Source: Octopus sinensis | Lineage: Eukaryota | Assembly: GCF_006345805.1 (NCBI RefSeq) | Contig: NC_043008.1 | Location: 75,206,001 to 75,270,000, forward strand | DNA length: 64,000 nt | Reading direction: 5' to 3' | Part shown: positions 1,131 through 47,282 of the stretch, one piece after another | Layout of the letters: each line of letters starts with the position of its first letter | How positions within the stretch are numbered: position 1 is the stretch's first letter | The notes under the pieces: generated by a model | The model's database searches: none | What the model was told of the DNA's origin: nothing | What the model saw: the letters and a program-made list of their open reading frames with translations, nothing else | Made by a program: the position numbers and the translations under genes

Positions 1131-1889
1131 CGAAGAAACACTTCAATGATTAGGCTGAATTCAACAACCAGACTAGCTTCACTAGATGTGGCCTAACTTT
1201 GATAGAGAGCTGAGAATGAAATAAAAATAATAACTCACAGTTTAGTAAAACAATGACGAAGAGAGATATAGCAAGTTTCATGGTGCAGCTTCTACAATTG
1301 GTACCTAGTTGCAACTGCAAACTACTCTAAAAATCTTGCATTTATAAAGAATCTTTGTCTTGCATTCTATAGTTCCCGTGTGATACAGAAAAGCTGTTAG
1401 TTTGTTATTATTTGTTAAGATAATGACCAATGTAGAGTATTTTTCATCTCTAAATATTGAAAAGTACCAAATGGTAGATGTTAACTTAATTCTTTTTTCT
1501 TGTAAGCGTAATACCAGTCAAGAGTATTGTTGTTCCAAGTATTAGTTTGACGTGAATGATCACCACTATAACGAAAACTATTAGGTTAAGTTGTATACAT
1601 TAGGTTAAGTTTATTTACTTACTGTATTCGAAGCCTATTATTATTGTCATTGTTGTTATTTTTGTTGCTGTTATGATTGATTAGCATACCCTTCACGTCA
1701 TAGGTATCTGCATGAGTTCAGATTGATAATACTATTGAATGAATATTTGACAATTAAAACTCGTTCAATAGCAAAATGAAGAATTACTAAAACGACATAA
1801 ATGAAACCATATTGTATTTTCCTTTTCAAATGTCATAAAGAACATACTTAACACTCAGTGAGATGCACAAATACACGCGCACGCACTCG

Positions 1890-8319: not shown

Positions 8320-9262
8320 CTTAACTTAGAATAACTTAGAAAGGTTTTGGCCAGTATTGGCCCAGGCCATGTCTAACTTAATAGCACCACCTGGTGAAGT
8401 CTTTCAGTTCAGGATTTGGGCACCAAGGCCCATTCGAGCAGAGAGTTATTGTTTGCGGAGACATATCCGGGTGTGGGTGGTTTGTCCGGTACTGCTTGAA
8501 GGAATTTGTCCAAAGACTTCTTGAATTTTGTGTGGTCAGTTTCTTTTTTGACGTGCCCTGGTGTAATGTTGAAGAGAGCAGGTCCAATTGAGGTGAAATA
8601 GTTGTGCCGTATTGTCGTTATGTGATGCGATTTAGATTTTTGTTGTGGACGGATGGCACGTGGTCCAAGCCTTGGATGCATTTTGAAGGTGATGCCAACA
8701 TCATTCGAACAGTGCTGGTGGAATATTTTCCACATCATACAGATAATGTAGCGTTCACGGCGTCGTTGGAGTGAATACAATTTCAGCTTCTCTAGTCTAC
8801 CCCAGTAGTCAAGGTCTGACATGCCATCTATCTTTTTTGTGATTGACCTTTGGGGAGCTTCAATTCTCATAATATTTTGTTTTGTGTAGGGAGACCACAG
8901 TGGACAGCAGTATTCAAGGTGGGGTCGGGCAAAAGTGGAGAAGAGAAGGATAATAGCGCGGGAATCTCTCGACTGGAAGGTTCTGAGAATCCAGGAACAC
9001 ATTCTGCGGGCCATGTCAACTTTGCTGCTTATATGTGTAGCCCAGCTTATGTTGTTGTCCACTGTTACTCCCAGGTCTCTGATGTTGTTGGATGCCATGA
9101 GAATTTCTCCAGAAGGAAGAGAGTATGGGAGTTTCAGAGCGTCCTCCCTTCCAAAGTGGATCAGTTCAAATTTGTCTTCATTTAGCAACATGTTATTCTT
9201 TTCCGCCCATTGGACAACAGCCAGTCGGTCTGACTGAAGGTTTATTCGGTCATCCACGCCGA
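8319..9262 (-). mobile_element. CR1-like LINE 3' fragment, copy 1 (RT C-terminal region + 3' UTR)
   Basis: ORF 8409-9257: LQSD..WAEKNNMLLNEDK, IRDLGVTVD, RPHLEYCCPLWSP, LYSLQRRRER; ctaagtt-type tail repeats; both ends in (TA)n. Confidence 0.85.
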
Positions 9263-9298: not shown

Positions 9299-10240
9299 AC
9301 TTAACTTAGAATAACTTAGAAAGGTTTTGGCCAGTATTGGCCCAGGCCATGTCTAACTTAATAGCACCACCTGGTGAAGTCTTTCAGTTCAGGATTTGGG
9401 CACCAAGGCCCATTCGAGCAGAGAGTTATTGTTTGCGGAGACATATCCGGGTGTGGGTGGTTTGTCCGGTACTGCTTGAAGGAATTTGTCCAAAGACTTC
9501 TTGAATTTTGTGTGGTCAGTTTCTTTTTTGACGTGCCCTGGTGTAATGTTGAAGAGAGCAGGTCCAATTGAGGTGAAATAGTTGTGCCGTATTGTCGTTA
9601 TGTGATGCGATTTAGATTTTTGTTGTGGACGGATGGCACGTGGTCCAAGCCTTGGATGCATTTTGAAGGTGATGCCAACATCATTCGAACAGTGCTGGTG
9701 GAATATTTTCCACATCATACAGATAATGTAGCGTTCACGGCGTCGTTGGAGTGAATACAATTTCAGCTTCTCTAGTCTACCCCAGTAGTCAAGGTCTGAC
9801 ATGCCATCTATCTTTTTTGTGATTGACCTTTGGGGAGCTTCAATTCTCATAATATTTTGTTTTGTGTAGGGAGACCACAGTGGACAGCAGTATTCAAGGT
9901 GGGGTCGGGCAAAAGTGGAGAAGAGAAGGATAATAGCGCGGGAATCTCTCGACTGGAAGGTTCTGAGAATCCAGGAACACATTCTGCGGGCCATGTCAAC
10001 TTTGCTGCTTATATGTGTAGCCCAGCTTATGTTGTTGTCCACTGTTACTCCCAGGTCTCTGATGTTGTTGGATGCCATGAGAATTTCTCCAGAAGGAAGA
10101 GAGTATGGGAGTTTCAGAGCGTCCTCCCTTCCAAAGTGGATCAGTTCAAATTTGTCTTCATTTAGCAACATGTTATTCTTTTCCGCCCATTGGACAACAG
10201 CCAGTCGGTCTGACTGAAGGTTTATTCGGTCATCCACGCC

Positions 10241-10242
<2 letters not shown>
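9299..10242 (-). mobile_element. CR1-like LINE 3' fragment, copy 2 (tandem duplicate, 980-bp period)
   Basis: Every ORF in the track recurs with identical translation at +980 (8409/9389, 8850/9830, 8935/9915, 8378/9358). Confidence 0.85.
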
Positions 10243-10285
<43 letters not shown>

Positions 10286-10413
10286 GGTAGGTACATAGGT
10301 ATATATATATATATATATATATATGTAGGTAGGTACATAGGTAGTACGGACAGACAAGTTCACACACACATAGACAAATGAAGACTGGAAGACATGACCA
10401 TATACACACACGC

Positions 10414-10487: not shown

Positions 10488-11004
10488 TGATAAATGCCCT
10501 GATGGCTTCTGATCTTAACTGATTGGAAGTGCTATCATGTACATTGTTTTGTCTTGGTATAAAAGATGGGCTACAGCAAAAATTCTATTCAATATCTCAG
10601 AATTGCTTGTCAGTTGTTTGACCTTAACCAGTTGACCACGTCCCTTAGTGACTGACGATATGTACATCTCTCATCACGAGCAGATGTATTGGGGGAGCAG
10701 CATAGCCATGTAGTGAGCGGGATTCTTTGGGGTTTCAATAATTCACCTTTGGAAACATGGGTGTTTCGTTCAACATCCTTAAACAACCCTTATTCAGGGA
10801 CCTTTTGAGCGAGATGGGTTACTGGAACTGGGCCCCACCTGCAAGGTCATGTGCTTTTTATCTTGATATGAGATCACCATGTCGTGCACATATGGTTGTG
10901 ATGCATATACCTGGTGTACCCTTATCAGATAGGTAGTCATGATGTGTATACTGGGCTTCGTAATTTTACCCCAGTGTTACTTTGATGGCATGAGCTGCTC
11001 TCTC
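10486..11004. mobile_element. Non-coding ~520-bp repeat element embedded in (AAT)n
   Basis: Higher-complexity, more GC-rich block bounded by (AAT)n at 10418-10485 and 11005-11065; no long ORF. Confidence 0.5.
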
Positions 11005-11017
11005 AATAATAATAATA

Positions 11018-11066
<49 letters not shown>

Positions 11067-26262: not shown

Positions 26263-26394
26263 CTCCTGTTTGACCCCATCCAGCAATAACACATTCCCTC
26301 GTAAAGCTGTCACCGTACTGCGCCATTGGTATCGGTTGCCGACATGGATTGAATGTTATTGCTTTGGGCAAAGTCAGTACTGTTACATCGTTCT
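26263..26394 (-). CDS. S1A serine protease, exon 4 (catalytic Asp)
   Basis: tttcag|AG AAC GAT..GGA G|gtaagt; (Q)NDVTVLTLPKAITFNPCRQPIPMAQYGDSFTRECVIAGWGQTG; Asp codon 26387-26389. Not in the ORF track. Confidence 0.93.
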
Positions 26395-26889: not shown

Positions 26890-28136
26890 CAGGGTGCGTA
26901 AGATATTTGAGGGCAGATTTATGCTTAATAAAAAGAAACAGATATATAACAGATAACTTTATTTATGAAAAAAATGCTACGAGGATAAAAATAACACTCT
27001 TTTCTATAATGTTATTCGATAAAGCCACCTTCAGCTTCAACAACTGCTTCTATATGAAATCTAAATCGCTACATACTCGAATCACGTAGTCTCGGTTCAT
27101 TTTGAACATTACTCTTACAATGACAGCTTTCATAGAATCTTTGGTGTTATGGGCGTGTTCATTGACCTCTCTCTCAACAACGCTCAATATGTTATAGTCC
27201 GTTAGCTTGAGATCAGGGGAATTATGAGGCTAAATGTTAGGGGTTATGTGATCAGGAGAATTTTCAGCCATCCATTCCTGTGTTAGAGCCATGTGTGATA
27301 GTGCAGAGTCTTACTGAAGCACATATGGCCTTCCATTGCATACACTGTCTATCCAGGGCTTAACAGTTATTTCCAGGGCCTCATTGTAGGCGGCAGAGTT
27401 AACTTGTGGAAATAAGTAAGGGGGCATCACATGTCATTCATTGCTGACAACCCCTAAAGCCATGACAGTTGCAGAAAATCTTGTGTGTATAACACTTGGA
27501 ACTTCAGAAGAGTCTGCACATAATCATCTGTTATTTCTCCTGTTAACCTTTTGATCTTGGCCGAAGACTTTCTCGTCTGAGAAAAACTAAATAAAATCTT
27601 CTTCTGCTGGATTTTTCAGCTTGTTTGTGAGCCTTTAAATCTGATGTAGTGATTTTCTTTTGCTTTTTCTAAGAAATTGACCTTTCCTCATCATATAAGA
27701 CTTATATCTGATGTCTTCGCGGACAACATTTCTAACTGTTCCTTCTGAAACATGGAGATCTTTTGCAATTGGCTTCATGAACTTTCTGGGATTGTAATCA
27801 ATGTTCTGTTGAACTTGGTGGATACATTCAGGTGTTCTGATAATTTCAGAACGTTTTGAATATTTTTTTATGCTTTAATACTGGTGACACGTTTCCATCT
27901 TCAGTCTCTAGCTCCTTACAAACTTTGTAGACGAAAGATCTAGCAATTTTTAAAACGCGAGATATTTCTAAATCACTATGCTCAGCCTTTATAACTACAA
28001 TAACAACCTGCCTGTTCATTTCTTGAGTAAGCTGAGGCTCTGCCATTATCATTTTCTGAAACAAGATTGTCCAGAGTTCGCAAGAAATTCAGCAATGACT
28101 CCCAAAATGTATGTCTCAAATACCTTACGCACCCTC
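26890..28136 (-). mobile_element. Full-length decayed Tc1/mariner-superfamily transposon, maT (DD37D)-like, in intron 3
   Basis: TIRs CAGGGTGCGTAAGATATTTGAG / GAGGGTGCGTAAGGTATTTGAG with TA on both sides; HTH ORF 27846-28064; FFSDEK, Q*DSALSH and NSPDLKLTDY motifs; 36 codons between second and third Asp in this copy. Confidence 0.8.
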
Positions 28137-28368: not shown

Positions 28369-28493
28369 GAAATTTAGGCGGCCCTGTATACTTTTTATTG
28401 GCGTGTATATTGTCTTTGGTGACAATCATACTTTCTTTCATGTTGTCTATGTTATTTCCACCAGCAGAAACTTTCACATGTTCGGCACCAACA
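28369..28493 (-). CDS. S1A serine protease, exon 3
   Basis: cattcag|T GTT GGT..TTT C|gtatgt; (V)VGAEHVKVSAGGNNIDNMKESMIVTKDNIHANKKYTGPPKF; phase 2 in and phase 1 out match the neighbouring exons. Confidence 0.88.
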
Positions 28494-31086: not shown

Positions 31087-31276
31087 ACACAATGGGCAGC
31101 TGTGAGAATATGCATGCTGTCTATAATTGATCCCCCGCAGAGAAAATACCCTTTTGCAGTTTTAATTATCAGGGCCACCATCCAAGGAAATTCACAGGTG
31201 GTGGCATATGATCCATCAATAATATGGTGAAGGTTTCGTTTTACACGTGCAACTGATCCATCGATGTTGCCACAAA
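31087..31276 (-). CDS. S1A serine protease, exon 2 (propeptide, mature N-terminus, catalytic His)
   Basis: tttcag|TT TGT..TGT GT|gtaagt; CGNIDGSVARVKRNLHH-IIDGSYATTCEFPWMVALIIK..FLCGGSIIDSMHILTAAHC; His codon 31092-31094. Confidence 0.95.
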
Positions 31277-33728: not shown

Positions 33729-33789
33729 GTGCAACAGTCACTACTACTGTCAGGAGTAGGATAATGTTTACAAGTGAATTCATCTTCAT
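33729..33789 (-). CDS. S1A serine protease, exon 1 (signal peptide)
   Basis: ATG AAG ATG..GCA C|gtaagt = MKMNSLVNIILLLTVVVTVA, hydrophobic core ending in V-A; phase 1 matches exon 2. Joined CDS is 813 nt = 270 aa + stop. Confidence 0.8.
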
Positions 33790-33790
33790 T

Positions 33791-33826
33791 GAATGATAGG
33801 TTTTAGAGGAGAAACCAGAATTTATA
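33791..33826 (-). promoter_or_regulatory. TATA box + initiator core promoter of the protease gene
   Basis: TATAAAT at 33826-33820 and TCATTC at 33796-33791; first T of TATA is 32 nt upstream of the Inr A (33794). Confidence 0.65.
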
Positions 33827-36570: not shown

Positions 36571-38008
36571 CAGAGGTTGCACAAAATAATGGAAACACCT
36601 TAAAATTAAATTTATTTCAATATGGGATAGGACCGCCTTTGGCAAAAATTACAGCTTGAATTCTACAAGGTATGAACTCGTACATACTTTGAATTGTTTC
36701 TAAAGGAATTGTTGTCCATTCTTCAAATAAAACAGTCTCCAGTTCTTGTAGTGATGATAGTGGAGAATATCGACTCCTTACTTGTTTTTCTAAAATGCAC
36801 CATAAAGGTTCAATTATATTGAGATCTGAGGAGTGGAGGCCAGATAAGATGTTCAATATCACTAGAATGTTCCTTATGTCCTTCAGTAACAATCTTAGCT
36901 GTGTGAATTGGTGCATTACCATCCTGAAAGATTACGCTTCCCTCCGGAAACAATTCCACAACCATACGATGAATTTGATCAGATAAAATGCTTAAATAGT
37001 CTTGACTATTTATTCTGCCATGAAGGGAACCCATTGGGCCGGCGGATTTCCAAGATATAGCCTCTAGATCATCACAGACCCTCCTCCATGTTTAACAGTT
37101 GGAAGAAGGCAGTCTGAGTCAAATGCTTCTTTTGGCGATCTCCACGCGTATACTCGGCCGGCAGTCGGAAATAAGGTAATTGATGACTCGTCCGAGAAAG
37201 TAACATTCTTTAACTAATCTAGGGACCAATTTTGCAGGTTTTTACTCCACTCTAAACGCATCGCAACGTTTGTTTTTGAAGTAGTGGTTTTCTGATTGCA
37301 GCCTTTCTGGGAAATCTAGCTTCGTACCACTCCTGGCGAACAGACTTTGTGGAAACTGGATTCTCGAGGTGTTCATTAAGCTCTGCAGTAATTGTGCAAT
37401 CTGCACTTTTGTGATCCTTTCTTACAATTCGCATAAGAGTCCAACGGTCCCTATGTAAAGGTTTTGGTTTTCTATCGGAGTTTTGTTTCGACGAGGAGGT
37501 TTTTCCCTCTTTCTCAAAGGATGTCATTACATTTGAGACAGTATTTCTAGATGCACCAAACATTTCAGCTGTTTTTGTTACCCTAGCGCCTGCCATACGA
37601 GCACCAACAATTTGACCTCGTTGAAAGTCCGATAGATCTGTCATTTTAATGAATTTTAATTACCTTTTTCTAATGATATGTGAAAAGAAACAGCAATTTT
37701 AGCAAAACTGTTTTGTCGACGCCCCCAGACAATAAAGTAAGCTAGCCCAATACGTAGATATAGCGGGAGAAGTCTGGACGTCCAGGAGTTGAGTAGAGGT
37801 CTTCCGAACGTGCGATATAACAGTGGTGACGAGGATTTCTTAGCTCACACAGCCACTGTGTAGTATTGCGATATAACAAAAACATATTAAGTAATACTAA
37901 TAATAAATCTAAGAACATAAACACAAACAAGCTTTTGACGGATTTATGGAGATTTCAAAATTATGATGCTATGATGCTAGGTGTTTCCATTATTTTGTCC
38001 AACCCTTG
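36571..38008 (-). mobile_element. Full-length decayed Tc1-family transposon
   Basis: 30-bp TIRs (CAGAGGTTGCACAAAATAATGGAAACACCT / CAAGGGTTGGACAAAATAATGGAAACACCT), TA at 36569-70 and 38009-10; ORF pieces 37252-37644 (HTH), FSDES, FQDGNAPIH, DLNIIEPLW; frameshifted. Confidence 0.9.
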
Positions 38009-44399: not shown

Positions 44400-45727
44400 T
44401 ACAGAAGGCTTGTTTTAAAAGGTTAAAAAATATATATTTGAGTCATTATGTCTGAAGAATGTTATAAATTTTTTTCATACAATGACATAGTTTTTGAAGA
44501 AATGACCGGTTTCGCGTTCAGCTTTTCAAATTTATTACATCGTTATGTTTACGTTGAGAAGTGTGAAGAAAGAGTTCCAAATAAGGGGAGGTAATAAGCG
44601 ATTTCTTCCGTTGTAAGGGAGATAATCGCTTAATATTTCTTGCCTTTTTTTGGAGTGAGTTTCTCTGTATAAGAATGTTGGAATGGTTAAGTTTGGGCTT
44701 GTATTTTTCAATGAAGAATGTTTCCTTTTTTAGTCTAATTTGTGTTGGTGTTCCGAAAGCACATTGGAAAAATGGAAAGATTAAACATTGTGGTAGTAGT
44801 TGCTTTGCGCATTTCTCAATGTGCTCACTAAAGGGGATCATTCTGTATTCTGGGAATGCAATCTTTTGTCGATGCAGTGTGCATCTACGTCTGAGTGATA
44901 GTCCCGTGGACCCCACGTAGTTTTGGTGGCAGCCCGAGCATTTTATGACATAAATTATGTTTTCAGAGGCACAAGTAAAATTAGATTTGATCTTGAATTT
45001 CTGTCCCTCTTTGAAGAGGAATTCTGATCCTTCTAGCAGGTTTGGACATGTTGCACAGTTCGGTCTACCACATTTTGTTACTTTTGCATCCGTAATTTCA
45101 GAAAACAATTTTACCTTTGTGAGAATCTTTTTAAGTGATTTAGGTTGTTTGTAGCTTTTAATGATTTGGTGTATGTTTAGAATTTCCTTTAATTTGGGGT
45201 CCTTATGAAGTATTGGTAAATTCTGGGTGATGATGGTGAAGGCTTCTTTGTTTCTGTGGTTGTATGTGGATATGTAAGGTAGTATTTTCGGGGAAGGTAT
45301 GTAGTTGTGGTGAACTTTTCTCAAAGTTTCTATGTTGATTTCTGTTGCACGTCTGATCCCATCCTCTATGAGTTGAGCTGGGTAATGTCTGTCAATTAGG
45401 GTGTTTTTGAGTTCTTGCAGTCTAAAGTTCCTGGTATTTTGTTCTGACACTATTGTGCATATCCTTCTTGCAAGGTTAAAGGGGATGTTTGTTTTAGTGT
45501 GTCTTGGGTGGCATGAATCAAAAAGTAGGTATTGTTTGGCGTCTGTGGCTTTGTAAAAAATGTATGTTTCTATTTTAAGGTTAATTTTTTTAATTAGTAT
45601 ATCTAAGAATGGGAGCTCCTTTTTGTTGTATTCCATTGTGAACTGTATATTTGGGTTTATGCTGTTCAATAGGTTTTTGAATTTTAGGAGCTTATCTGTG
45701 TTTTCATTCCAGAGTATAAACCAATAT
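44400..45727 (-). mobile_element. 5'-truncated Penelope-like element (RT C-terminus + GIY-YIG endonuclease)
   Basis: ORF 44518-45840, genuine part below ~45727: LNSINPNIQFTME..LPFLDILI, YLLFDSCHP.HTK.NIPF, CGRPNCATC, NIIYVIKC..C.QNYVGST..LRRR..H; ~400 uninterrupted codons. 3' boundary approximate. Confidence 0.9.
44500..44533 (-). ncRNA. Degenerate minimal hammerhead motif at the Penelope 3' end
   Basis: AAAT-TTGAAAA-GCTGAACGC-GAAA-CCGG-TC-ATTT; GAAACCGGTC and stem I intact, core differs from CTGAAGA at two positions. Confidence 0.35.
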
Positions 45728-45745
45728 TTATATATATATATATAT

Positions 45746-47282
45746 ATACAAGTAATAAGAGAGAGACCACATGTGGTCACTCTAACGATAGAAATAGATC
45801 CGCAAAGGGAATCCACCACTAAAGAATTGTTCTTAAGCATTAATTCAACACGCCAAGAATGTAAGCGGGCAGGACAATTGAAAAATAACGAAAAAATAGA
45901 TTAACTCTATACAATTGTTTCATCGTTAATAGATTGTGTAATTTTACTTACACAATCATTTTCGAATCCTCAGTAGAGTATATCAAAAATATAATTTGCT
46001 GAACCGAACGCCAAAATCCATACGAAGCCGAGCAAAGGGGAACGGCACAGCCGATTATATTTGCAGTTACGTTCAAATATCCTCATTCCTGGCGCGTTGA
46101 AAATACCGGATGTAAATACTACTCCAGTAATTTATTGCCGGTTTCAGAACATATTAATTTATAATTGAAATAACAATAAGGGTAAAAAAAATTGAATATT
46201 AATTAATAACATCAATTTAAAACACCAAGTGGCCTAGCGTAAAAAAAAAACTGTGATGCAGTAAAAATTATTAATACAAGTAATGAGAGAGACCACATGT
46301 GGTCACTCTAACGATAGAAATAGATCCGCAAAGGGAATCCACCACTAAAGAATTGTTCTCAAGCATTAATTCAACTCGCCAAGAATGTAAGCGGGCAGGA
46401 CAAATGAAAAATAACGAAAAAATAGATTAACTCTATACAATTGTTTCATCGTTAATAGATTATGTAATTTTACTTACACAATCATTTTCGAATCCTCAGT
46501 AGAGTGTATCGAAAATATAATTTGCTGAACCGAACGCCAAAATCCATACGAAGCCGATAAAAGGCGAACGGCACAGCCGATTATATTTGTAGTTGAGGTT
46601 CAAATATCCTCATTCCTAGGGCGTTGAAATACCGGATGTAAATACTACCCCAGTAATTTACTGCCGGTTTGAGAACATATTAATTTATAATTAAAATCAC
46701 AATAAGGGTGAAAAAAATTGAAGATTAAATAATAACATCAATTTAAAACACCAAGTGGCCTAGCGTAAAATAAAACTGTGATACAGTAAAAATTATTAAT
46801 ACAAGTAATAAGAGAGAGACCACATGGTCACTCTAACGCTAGAAATAGATCCGCAAAGGGAATCCACCACTAAAGAATTGTTCTCAAGCATTCTCGGCTT
46901 CGTATGGATTTTGGCGTTCGGTTCAGCAAATTATATTTTCGATATACTCTACTGAGGATTCGAAAATGATTGTGTAAGTAAAATTACACAATCTATTAAC
47001 GATGAAACAATTGTATAGAGTTAATCTATTTTTTCGTTATTTTTCATTTGTCCTGCCCGCTTACATTCTTGGCGTGTTGAATTAATGCTTGAGAACAATT
47101 TTTTAGTGGTAGATTCCCTTTGCGGATCTATTTCTATCGTTAGAGTGACCACACGTGGTCTCTCTCTTATTACTTGTATTAATAATTTTTACTGTATCAC
47201 AGTTTTTTACGCTAGGCCACTTGGTGTTTTAAATTGATGTTATTGATTATTATTCAAATTTTTTCACCCTTATTGTGATTTT
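45746..47282. repeat. ~527-bp unit: 2.2 head-to-tail copies plus ~390-bp inverted block
   Basis: Unit starts at 45746, 46274, 46799; orientation switches at 46892/46893; inverted unit start at 47179. Confidence 0.9.

What the first reader, a model, noticed from the sequence alone, without database searches (positions are those of the whole stretch)
31200..31260. Atypical zymogen activation: RVKR-NLHH-IIDG
Seen: the mature N-terminus IIDG follows His, not Arg/Lys; a furin-type R-X-K-R site ends four residues earlier. Established: granzymes and cathepsin G are activated by dipeptidyl peptidase I removing a dipeptide. Inference: two-step activation by convertase cleavage then removal of NL and HH dipeptides, or a pH/metal-sensitive His-His switch. 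This could be a safety catch for a stored gland enzyme.
Basis: partly seen in the sequence, partly recalled or inferred. Interest (0 to 1): 0.7.

Follow-up and report, generated by a model that had tools for sequence, protein, structure and literature searches.

The report
Octopus protease zymogen with His cleavage site
The motif is real: an Octopus sinensis secreted chymotrypsin-type protease gene has a histidine, not the usual arginine or lysine, before its activating cut, plus a convertase-type site four residues upstream; this points to an untested multi-step switch-on shared in part by neighbouring octopus protease genes.

Summary
On the minus strand, window 31247-31212 encodes R31-V-K-R34 / N-L-H-H38 / I39-I-D-G42. 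It lies in exon 2 of a six-exon gene whose 270-aa product is identical to RefSeq XP_029643765.1, "chymotrypsinogen A" of Octopus sinensis. Ile39 is the canonical Ile16: Pfam and solved mature proteases both start aligning there.

His at P1 is rare (0 of 143 background S1 domains). So is an R-X-K/R-R site displaced upstream of P1 (0 of 141).

The gene sits in an octopod tandem cluster of four S1 genes. All four have His/Arg-rich propeptide ends, mostly non-canonical P1 residues (His, Asn/Ser, one Lys) and a rare Glu189.

RVKR plus the 4-residue spacer is seen only in this gene and its O. bimaculoides orthologue (RVKR-HLHH-IIDG). Those two species are too close for this to weigh much.

The convertase-then-DPPI model fits this gene in register and composition. 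In several relatives the last dipeptide starts with Arg, or Pro lies in register, which would block DPPI. An enzyme cutting after His, as for Drosophila Persephone or the mite Der p 1 system, is therefore at least as likely for step two.

Nothing is shown experimentally. Gland expression of this gene is unverified. I rate it a new variant of a known kind, of moderate interest.

The parts
33729..33789 (-). Exon 1: ATG and signal peptide (MKMNSLVNIILLLTVVVTVA plus the first base of Leu21). GTAAGT donor.
   Evidence: tblastn to the O. bimaculoides orthologue gives 95% identity. The model equals RefSeq.
33821..33826 (-). TATAAA, ending 31 nt upstream of the ATG (about 37 nt start to start). Possible core promoter; weak evidence in AT-rich DNA.
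   Evidence: Read directly from the sequence.
31087..31276 (-). Exon 2: propeptide L21-H38 and the start of the catalytic domain, through TAAHC (His57 = H82, 31094-31092).
31272..31274 (-). Propeptide Cys22, the ancestral 'CG' motif. Its canonical partner Cys122 has been replaced by Pro148 (26329-26327).
   Evidence: 33 of 77 homologues have both cysteines; this gene and its orthologue keep only the propeptide one.
31236..31247 (-). R31-V-K-R34: a proprotein-convertase (furin-type) R-X-K-R motif.
   Evidence: It lies in a segment with pLDDT below 50, so it is probably exposed. Displaced motifs of this kind: 0 of 141 background domains.
31224..31235 (-). N35-L-H-H38: the four-residue spacer, with P1 = His38 and P2 = His37.
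   Evidence: O. bimaculoides has HLHH, with a synonymous change in the His37 codon.
31212..31223 (-). I39-I-D-G42: the mature N-terminus (Ile16-Gly19 in chymotrypsin numbering).
28369..28493 (-). Exon 3 (VGAEHVKVSAGGNN...PPKF).
   Evidence: Phase-constrained exon search. Confirmed by tblastn and by identity to RefSeq.
26263..26394 (-). Exon 4: Asp102 (D128, 26389-26387), the clade-specific Cys143, and Pro148 in place of Cys122.
21482..21624 (-). Exon 5, ending ...GGAEACH. Glu189 = E214 (21493-21491).
15397..15558 (-). Exon 6: GDSGGP (Asp194 15555-15553, Ser195 15552-15550) through the stop codon. AATAAA follows 95 nt downstream at 15302.
1239..1281 (-). Exon 1 of the next tandem paralogue, chymotrypsin-1 (XP_029643801-like). 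The rest of that gene lies beyond the window's left edge.

Best explanation
This is the activation junction of a secreted S1A (chymotrypsin-fold) zymogen of Octopus sinensis. The gene is one of four tandem, octopod-specific protease genes. The enzyme becomes active only when Ile39 is freed as the N-terminus, so that it can pair with Asp194. Because P1 is His, a trypsin-type activator is unlikely. I think activation is sequential. Step 1 (inferred): a furin/PC-type convertase in the secretory pathway cuts after R31-V-K-R34. This releases an untethered N-terminal peptide that carries the now partnerless Cys22, and leaves a zymogen extended by N-L-H-H. Step 2 (inferred): a papain-family cysteine peptidase working at mildly acidic pH removes N-L-H-H. 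It does so either by one endoproteolytic cut after His38 (as for Persephone or the mite Der p 1 system) or by two dipeptide removals by cathepsin C/DPPI. Comparison with paralogues favours the endopeptidase route as the clade's common mechanism. DPPI remains possible for this particular gene.
For: Shown here:
- Gene model and identity to RefSeq.
- Full-length Trypsin domain starting at residue 39 and alignment of residue 39 to residue 1 of solved mature proteases.
- Intact triad and Asp194.
- Confident S1 fold with a disordered propeptide, residues 21-37 at pLDDT below 50.
- Purifying selection, pN/pS about 0.32 against O. bimaculoides.
- P1 His absent from 143 background domains.
- A displaced R-X-K/R-R motif absent from 141 background domains.
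- The orthologue keeps RVKR plus a 4-residue X-L-H-H spacer.
- Cys122 is lost, so the propeptide is not tethered to the enzyme.
- Relatives share His/Arg at P2 and P3 with variable P1. TMPRSS12-like paralogue: HRH|I in four species including Argonauta. Chymotrypsin-1: KHN, KHS or RHS|I. Squid SP1-SepT-2 (a more distant relative, outside the cluster): RH|I.

Precedents:
- Persephone has P1 His, is first cut upstream, and is then matured by cysteine cathepsin 26-29-p (PMC5823974).
- Mite S1 zymogens with non-basic P1 are activated by the cysteine protease Der p 1 through a shared propeptide end (PMC3978338).
- Cathepsins B and L are prominent in the octopus digestive gland, and DAP I activity has been reported in cephalopods.
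Against: No cleavage has been observed; both steps are inferred from sequence. RVKR is not found in any paralogue. Its conservation rests on two species whose introns are still 85-91% identical. No orthologue from a more distant octopod was found. The tissue and compartment of expression are unknown for this gene. Whether octopus has a His-accepting cathepsin could not be tested. The P1 of chymotrypsin-1 toggles between Asn and Ser, so 'cleavage after His' is not a clade-wide rule.
Confidence: 0.45

Rival explanations
1. One reading: a convertase cuts after RVKR, then DPPI (cathepsin C) removes N-L and then H-H. Trimming stops once Ile39 inserts into the activation pocket.
For: The spacer is exactly 4 residues, has no Pro, and neither dipeptide starts with Arg or Lys. 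The same holds for HLHH in O. bimaculoides. DPPI trims dipeptides until a stop sequence and works best at acidic pH (PMC11337848). Granzymes are activated this way in granules (PMC4251435). DAP I activity has been reported histochemically in cephalopod digestive organs.
Against: The relatives with the most similar junctions are DPPI-incompatible under the mammalian rule (my own knowledge): TMPRSS12-like R-H, squid SepT R-H, granzyme-B-like R-K, and Argonauta chymotrypsin-1-like with H-P in register. Known DPPI substrates carry a dipeptide directly after the signal peptide, usually ending in Glu. An even, Pro-free 4-mer is not improbable by chance.
Confidence: 0.22
2. A single endoproteolytic cut at His38|Ile39 by a His-tolerant activator. 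RVKR is unused, or serves another purpose such as sorting or release of a small peptide.
For: Relatives lacking any convertase motif still have His at P1 (the TMPRSS12-like paralogue in four species, and squid SepT). They must therefore be cut directly after His.
Against: An exposed R-X-K-R in a secretory protein is normally cut by convertases (general knowledge). Displaced motifs are absent from 141 background domains, and the motif is kept in the orthologue.
Confidence: 0.15
3. Auto- or trans-activation within the cluster. The Glu189 enzymes accept protonated His (or Lys) at P1, giving a pH-gated mini-cascade. The member with Lys at P1 would be the entry point.
For: Glu189 is found in all four paralogues and is rare elsewhere: 11 of 365 S1 domains, and 8 of those 11 come from this cluster. 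Three of four paralogues have His at P1 or P2. One has Lys at P1.
Against: Chymotrypsin-1 has Asn or Ser at P1. Squid SepT has P1 His but Thr189. No specificity data exist for any member (PMC7656900). The claim that Glu189 favours His is only a geometric argument.
Confidence: 0.1
4. Annotation artefact, or a non-activated, decaying gene.
For: No transcript or peptide for this gene was found in the sources I could search. The O. vulgaris annotation holds only a 95-aa fragment.
Against: The same 270-aa model was independently predicted in two species. All splice sites are canonical, the reading frame and triad are intact, and pN/pS is about 0.32.
Confidence: 0.03

Closest known systems
Drosophila Persephone (CLIP-domain S1 protease) matured by cathepsin 26-29-p
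   Same: His at P1 of the activation site. Sequential activation: an upstream cut first, then removal of the remaining residues by cleavage after His (PMC5823974).
   Different: Persephone has a CLIP domain that stays disulfide-tethered, and a broad-specificity 'bait' region cut by microbial proteases. Here there is no CLIP domain, no tether (Cys122 is lost), and the upstream site is a defined convertase motif. The octopus activator is unknown.
Granzymes, cathepsin G, chymase and neutrophil elastase (DPPI/cathepsin C-activated granule proteases)
   Same: A very short N-terminal extension keeps a stored S1 enzyme inactive. Exopeptidase trimming would stop once the Ile-Ile N-terminus is buried. 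The II-x-G start is shared.
   Different: Those zymogens carry a single dipeptide directly after the signal peptide, usually ending in Glu. Here the propeptide is 18 residues and needs a prior endoproteolytic cut, after which two dipeptides remain. Structural matches to that clade are only 24-27% identical in sequence (cathepsin G, chymase, duodenase, granzyme H), so there is no orthology.
House dust mite Der p 3, Der p 6 and Der p 9 zymogens activated by Der p 1
   Same: A set of co-occurring digestive S1 zymogens with non-basic P1 and a shared propeptide C-terminal motif matched to a papain-like cysteine protease (PMC3978338).
   Different: The mite motif is Pro/Ala/Gly/Thr-type, not His/Arg-rich. 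There is no convertase site. Activation has been shown in vitro for the mites and not at all for octopus.
Vertebrate chymotrypsinogen A (the RefSeq name of this gene)
   Same: Signal peptide, then a short propeptide beginning with Cys-Gly, then a single S1 domain. About 31% identity.
   Different: Arg15 at P1 and trypsin activation; the Cys1-Cys122 tether; a Ser189/Gly226 pocket. None of these is present here (His38, Pro148, Glu189/Ala226). The name reflects similarity only.
Cephalopod-specific posterior-salivary-gland S1 peptidases (e.g. SP1-SepT-2 of Sepioteuthis, R4FI31)
   Same: About 40% identity. Shared extra disulfide (Cys48-Cys143 equivalents) and loss of Cys122. SP1-SepT-2 also has His at P1 (RH|IVNG).
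   Different: Those have Thr/Ser/Ala at position 189, 2-4-residue propeptides, no convertase motif and no propeptide Cys. Gland expression is documented for them and for chymotrypsin-1, not for this gene.
Snake-venom serine proteases (my own knowledge, not tested here)
   Same: Gland-stored S1 enzymes whose short propeptide ends in a non-basic residue, with an activator that is not well defined.
   Different: An unrelated lineage, with no His-rich end and no convertase motif.

Membership tests
Peptidase family S1A (chymotrypsin fold) | Full-length match to the Trypsin domain model | tested here: met
   PF00089, E = 5.2e-48, residues 39-264 covering model positions 1-220 of 220.
Peptidase family S1A (chymotrypsin fold) | Catalytic triad His57/Asp102/Ser195, plus Asp194 and an Ile16-type N-terminus | tested here: met
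   H82 (TAAHC), D128 (NDVTVL), S220 and D219 (GDSGGP), I39-I-D-G.
Peptidase family S1A (chymotrypsin fold) | Two-beta-barrel fold | tested here: met
   AlphaFold2 mean pLDDT 88.7, with residues 39-270 mostly above 90. Foldseek top hits are crayfish trypsin, kallikrein, enteropeptidase and chymotrypsin, TM-score (target-normalised) 0.81-0.88.
Vertebrate-type chymotrypsinogen A | Arg at P1 (Arg15), for activation by trypsin | tested here: not met
   P1 is His38.
Vertebrate-type chymotrypsinogen A | Cys1-Cys122 disulfide tethering the propeptide | tested here: not met
   The Cys122 column holds Pro148. 42 of 77 homologues have Cys there.
Vertebrate-type chymotrypsinogen A | Ser189/Gly216/Gly226 specificity pocket | tested here: not met
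   Glu189, Gly216, Ala226, read from EACHGDSGGP and SYGAAKCQSGMAVY.
DPPI (cathepsin C)-activated granule proteases | A pro-dipeptide directly after the signal peptide | tested here: not met
   The propeptide is about 18 residues (L21-H38). Only after a hypothetical cut at RVKR do two dipeptides remain.
DPPI (cathepsin C)-activated granule proteases | Residues before Ile16 compatible with DPPI: even number, no Pro, no dipeptide starting with Arg or Lys | tested here: met
   N-L and H-H; H-L and H-H in O. bimaculoides. The rule itself comes from my knowledge of the mammalian enzyme.
DPPI (cathepsin C)-activated granule proteases | Actual dependence on DPPI | not testable with these tools
   Needs biochemistry.
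Proprotein-convertase (furin/PC) substrates | R-X-K/R-R motif in a secretory protein, in an exposed segment | tested here: met
   R31-V-K-R34. N-terminal hydrophobic signal sequence. Residues 21-37 have pLDDT below 50.
Proprotein-convertase (furin/PC) substrates | Cleavage at the motif in vivo | not testable with these tools
   No N-terminal proteomic data were found.
Persephone-type sequentially activated S1 zymogens | His at P1 of the activation site | tested here: met
   His38. Persephone His143.
Persephone-type sequentially activated S1 zymogens | CLIP prodomain and a protease 'bait' region | tested here: not met
   No CLIP domain (PF12032) was found in the Pfam scan. The propeptide is only 18 residues.
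Persephone-type sequentially activated S1 zymogens | Final maturation by a cysteine cathepsin | not testable with these tools
   Needs biochemistry or genetics.
Cephalopod posterior-salivary-gland S1 clade | Sequence affiliation with published gland S1 peptidases | tested here: inconclusive
   SP1-SepT-2 is the best non-cluster single-domain hit to the cluster profile (E = 2.7e-61, about 40% identity) and shares the Cys48-Cys143 pair. No phylogeny was built.
Cephalopod posterior-salivary-gland S1 clade | Expression in the posterior salivary gland | not tested
   Shown only for the neighbouring chymotrypsin-1: qPCR/RNA-seq marker and 8 peptides in the O. vulgaris gland proteome. The window gene's orthologue was not found in the truncated supplement files held.

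The most novel reading that the evidence does not exclude
The four tandem Glu189 proteases form a histidine-directed, pH-gated activation cascade. The member with Lys at P1 is started by an ordinary trypsin. Its shallower acidic S1 pocket then cuts after protonated His in the others, including His38|Ile39 here. In this gene the convertase cut first unmasks an N-terminal X-X-His (N-L-H, or H-L-H in O. bimaculoides). That is a copper/nickel-binding ATCUN-type motif, which could lock the N-terminus until acidification.
Probability: 0.08. Interest if true: 0.7.

Novelty: new variant of a known kind. Interest (0 to 1): 0.36.

Why it matters
Serine proteases dominate octopod salivary-gland ('venom') expression, yet none has been characterised functionally (PMC7656900). 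How they are kept silent and then switched on is unknown.

A clade-specific, non-trypsin activation junction would mean several things. These enzymes could not be activated by the usual laboratory route, trypsin. Recombinant work would need the right activator. Octopods may have rewired zymogen control towards cysteine peptidases or pH, in parallel with insect Persephone and dust-mite digestive proteases.

The practical value is a concrete, cheap biochemical test. The conceptual value is one more independent case of non-canonical S1 activation, together with a rare Glu189 pocket whose specificity is unknown.

Tried and rejected
1. A protein search with the 64-aa exon alone found nothing because of the word-index limit. 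The full model was needed.
I found exon 3 with a phase-constrained splice search instead.
3. Exon-versus-intron conservation between O. sinensis and O. bimaculoides is not informative. Introns are 85-91% identical, so conservation of the motif across these two species is weak evidence.
4. I considered that VKRNLHH is an insertion between an ancestral Arg P1 (S-V-A-R, compare Bulinus S-V-H-R|IIGG) and Ile16. Distances from the propeptide Cys to Ile16 range from 7 to 32 residues in homologues, so this is neither supported nor excluded.
5. Legumain as activator of chymotrypsin-1 (P1 Asn): rejected, because P1 is Ser in O. bimaculoides and Argonauta.
6. DPPI as the clade-wide activator: rejected, because of Arg-initiated last dipeptides and Pro in register in the relatives.
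7. Searches for expression or N-terminal evidence, by accession numbers in full texts and in the supplements of three papers, gave nothing for this gene.
8. The coordinates of the AlphaFold model were not available to scripts. I inferred the Cys48-Cys143 bond from perfect co-occurrence (9 of 9), not from distances. The position of Ile39 in the model could not be inspected.
9. No orthologue from more distant octopods was found, and no Argonauta orthologue.

Full report
**What is at the coordinates**

The window is AT-rich eukaryotic DNA (about 34% GC) with long introns, microsatellites and transposon remnants. The finding lies on the minus strand. Reverse-complementing 31295-31086 gives one open stretch reading ...VCGNIDGSVARVKRNLHHIIDGSYATTCEFPW...TAAHCV. 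It is flanked by a TTTCAG acceptor and a GTAAGT donor.

I built the gene from splice phases and S1 landmarks. It has six exons, all GT-AG: 33789-33729, 31276-31087, 28493-28369, 26394-26263, 21624-21482 and 15558-15397.

The 270-aa product is identical, residue for residue, to RefSeq XP_029643765.1, "chymotrypsinogen A" of Octopus sinensis. The model was therefore reached independently by NCBI's pipeline. The O. bimaculoides orthologue XP_014772671.1 is 95% identical and has the same length.

The motif is R31-V-K-R34 (31247-31236), N35-L-H-H38 (31235-31224) and I39-I-D-G42 (31223-31212).

**Is Ile39 really the mature N-terminus?**

The Pfam Trypsin model aligns from residue 39 to residue 264, covering model positions 1-220 (E = 5.2e-48). 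Solved mature chains of plasma kallikrein, factor XI, enteropeptidase and TMPRSS13 align their residue 1 to residue 39. His57, Asp102, Ser195 and Asp194 are present.

An AlphaFold2 model is confident for residues 39-270 (mean pLDDT 88.7). It leaves residues 21-37 below 50, which suggests a flexible, exposed propeptide. Foldseek returns ordinary S1 proteases.

**Is it more than chance?**

I took 143 S1 domains from the best library representatives.

| Feature | Background count |
|---|---|
| P1 = Arg | 94 of 143 |
| P1 = Lys | 24 of 143 |
| P1 = His | 0 of 143 |
| His share of the last eight propeptide residues | 2.6% |
| Domains with two or more His in those eight | 2 of 143 (both octopus chymotrypsin-1) |
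| R-X-[KR]-R ending at P1 | 3 of 141 |
| R-X-[KR]-R ending upstream of P1 | 0 of 141 |

The arrangement is unusual. Against O. bimaculoides the coding sequence shows 14 synonymous and 13 non-synonymous codon differences (pN/pS about 0.32), so the gene is under purifying selection. Within the 12-codon motif there is one replacement (N35H) and one synonymous change in the His37 codon.

However, introns of the two species are still 85-91% identical. Two-species conservation of the motif therefore carries little weight.

**Genomic and family context**

The gene is one of four tandem S1 genes on one chromosome. In O. vulgaris they are CAI9731159 to CAI9731162. In O. sinensis they are XP_029643779 (named granzyme B(G,H)), the window gene, XP_029643801 (chymotrypsin-1) and XP_029643720/21 (chymotrypsin B / TMPRSS12-like). 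Exon 1 of chymotrypsin-1 is inside the window at 1281-1239. In O. bimaculoides it starts 6 kb downstream of the orthologue.

The propeptide ends are as follows.

| Protein | Junction |
|---|---|
| Window gene | ...RVKRNLHH\|IIDG |
| O. bimaculoides orthologue | ...RVKRHLHH\|IIDG |
| Chymotrypsin-1, O. sinensis / O. vulgaris | ...HEQQHKHN\|IIGG |
| Chymotrypsin-1, O. bimaculoides | ...KHS\|IIGG |
| Chymotrypsin-1-like, Argonauta | ...HRKHEHHPHRHS\|IIGG |
| TMPRSS12-like, four species including Argonauta | ...SHHRH\|IMGG |
| Granzyme-B-like | ...RHAHHRK\|IWNG |
| Sepioteuthis gland SP1-SepT-2 | ...RH\|IVNG |
| Another Argonauta protein | ...RLHR\|IVNG |
| Sepia S1 peptidase | ...IRK\|IVGG |
| Gastropod Bulinus homologue | ICGQANSVHR\|IIGG (canonical) |

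The clade-level feature is a His/Arg-rich propeptide end with a relaxed P1. RVKR and the propeptide Cys-Gly are peculiar to the window gene and its orthologue.

In the mature domain the window gene is 61-62% identical to chymotrypsin-1 of both Octopus and Argonauta. Those two are 72% identical to each other. The duplication therefore probably predates the Octopus/Argonauta split. No Argonauta orthologue was found.

**Other clade signatures**

All four paralogues carry Glu at position 189, at the bottom of the S1 pocket. Glu189 occurs in 11 of 365 background domains, and 8 of those 11 come from this cluster.

Cys48 and Cys143 co-occur perfectly in the 77-sequence alignment (9 of 9, none alone), so they probably form a lineage-specific disulfide.

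The canonical Cys122 is Pro148 here. 42 of 77 homologues have Cys at that column, and 33 have both it and the propeptide Cys. The window protein keeps the ancestral propeptide Cys22 without its partner. The propeptide is therefore not tethered to the enzyme, and the precursor has an odd number of cysteines.

**Mechanism**

What is shown: this is an intact, selected S1 zymogen gene whose activation bond is His38-Ile39, with an exposed convertase-type motif four residues upstream. Everything beyond that is inference.

A trypsin-type activator is unlikely. Serine proteases that accept His at P1 are few, as noted for Persephone (PMC5823974).

An exposed R-X-K-R in a secretory protein is a standard convertase substrate (general knowledge). 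I consider a first cut after Arg34 likely. That leaves N-L-H-H-Ile39. Two routes could remove the four residues.

Cathepsin C/DPPI removes N-L and then H-H. This fits the register. Starting from L21, DPPI would stall at the Arg- and Lys-initiated dipeptides R31-V32 and K33-R34 (mammalian rule, my own knowledge). The convertase cut would thus be needed to let DPPI in. After it, exactly two permissible dipeptides remain, in both species. DPPI trims until a stop sequence and prefers acidic pH (PMC11337848). It activates granzymes in granules (PMC4251435).
- **Route b.** An endopeptidase cuts after His38. Precedents are Persephone, which is first cut upstream and then matured after His143 by cysteine cathepsin 26-29-p. 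Another precedent is the mite zymogens Der p 3, 6 and 9. These share a non-basic propeptide end matched to the cysteine protease Der p 1 (PMC3978338).

The relatives tip the balance towards route b as the common mechanism. In TMPRSS12-like (R-H), squid SepT (R-H) and granzyme-B-like (R-K) the last dipeptide starts with Arg, and Argonauta chymotrypsin-1-like has His-Pro in register. All of these would block DPPI, yet TMPRSS12-like and SepT have His at P1.

My best estimate is a two-step activation: a convertase cut, then a papain-family cysteine peptidase (confidence 0.45). The strict convertase-plus-DPPI version is at 0.22. A single cut after His is at 0.15. Glu189-mediated auto- or trans-activation is at 0.10.

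**Ideas not excluded**

After the convertase cut the N-terminus would be N-L-H (H-L-H in O. bimaculoides). That is X-X-His with a free amine, the ATCUN copper/nickel-binding pattern (my own knowledge). A bound metal would occupy the amine that DPPI needs, giving a metal- or pH-dependent lock. It rests on a single residue position and is speculative.

The Glu189 pocket might favour a shorter basic side chain such as protonated His. That would allow a pH-gated cascade within the cluster. Chymotrypsin-1 (P1 Asn/Ser) and SepT (P1 His but Thr189) do not fit neatly.

**Gland storage**

Serine proteases dominate octopod posterior-salivary-gland expression and have not been functionally assessed (PMC7656900). 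Chymotrypsin-1 is a gland marker in Paroctopus digueti, O. maya and O. hubbsorum (PMC12607849). Its O. bimaculoides orthologue A0A0L8HH16 appears in the O. vulgaris gland proteome with 8 peptides (PMC7693380 supplement).

For the window gene itself I found no expression or peptide evidence. "Stored gland enzyme" remains an assumption.

**Comparison and novelty**

The protein is a bona fide S1A peptidase. It is not a chymotrypsinogen A in the vertebrate sense, because it fails the Arg15, Cys1-Cys122 and Ser189 tests. It is not a granzyme-type DPPI substrate by architecture. It shares only the P1-His and two-step logic with Persephone.

The gene is already annotated. As far as the library searches show, the activation junction, the His-rich propeptide ends of the cluster and the Glu189 signature have not been discussed in print.

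I class it as a new variant of a known kind (non-canonical S1 zymogen activation) and rate its interest at about 0.36. It is real, unusual and cheaply testable. It is also entirely predictive, supported by shallow phylogenetic depth, and has several plausible mundane resolutions.

Noticed in passing
window 1239-1281 (-), TATAAA at 1341-1346: Exon 1 (signal peptide MKLAISLFVIVLLN...) of the tandem paralogue chymotrypsin-1 (XP_029643801-like). The rest of the gene lies beyond the left edge. Its propeptide ends ...HEQQHKHN|IIGG, which is non-canonical too.
   Followed up: partly
window 17851-20200 (intron 5): About 2.35 kb of almost pure (TA)n-type microsatellite, GC about 1.3%, inside the protease gene's last intron. 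The O. bimaculoides gene spans 11.4 kb against 18.4 kb here, so part of the size difference is repeat expansion.
   Followed up: no
window 31272-31274 (Cys22) and 26327-26329 (Pro148): The propeptide keeps the ancestral Cys-Gly motif but its canonical partner Cys122 is now Pro. This leaves an odd, probably free, cysteine in the precursor. Its role (dimerisation, thiol switch, or a relic inside or near the signal-peptide cleavage region) is unexplained.
   Followed up: partly
window 31194-31196 (Cys48) and 26342-26344 (Cys143): A pair of cysteines that co-occur perfectly in homologues (9 of 9; cephalopod clade plus the Bulinus homologue). This implies a lineage-specific extra disulfide. It could not be checked on model coordinates.
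   Followed up: partly
window 21491-21493 (Glu214 = position 189): Glu at the bottom of the S1 pocket, shared by all four tandem paralogues and rare elsewhere (11 of 365 domains, 8 of them from this cluster). Substrate specificity is unknown.
   Followed up: partly
window 36620-37659 (-) and about 27050-28090 (-, intron 3): Tc1/mariner-type transposase remnants with weak HTH_Tnp_Tc3_2, HTH_23 and DDE_3 hits and broken frames.
   Followed up: partly
window 44518-45840 (-): A 440-aa ORF with a weak GIY-YIG domain hit. It looks like the endonuclease end of a Penelope-like retroelement.
   Followed up: partly
window 8409-9257 and 9389-10411 (-): Two long ORFs (282 and 340 aa) in a locally GC-richer island (42.7%) between the two protease genes. 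There is no Pfam hit. A nearby segment (10845-11049) matches an unrelated place in the O. bimaculoides locus, so this is probably repeat-derived.
   Followed up: no
outside the window: O. sinensis XP_029643720 versus XP_029643721 (TMPRSS12-like paralogue): Isoform X1 differs from X2 by a Gly-Lys-Arg insertion just upstream of VFSSHHRH|IMGG. Alternative splicing would thus add a dibasic site ahead of a His-rich spacer, echoing the RVKR-NLHH layout.
   Followed up: no
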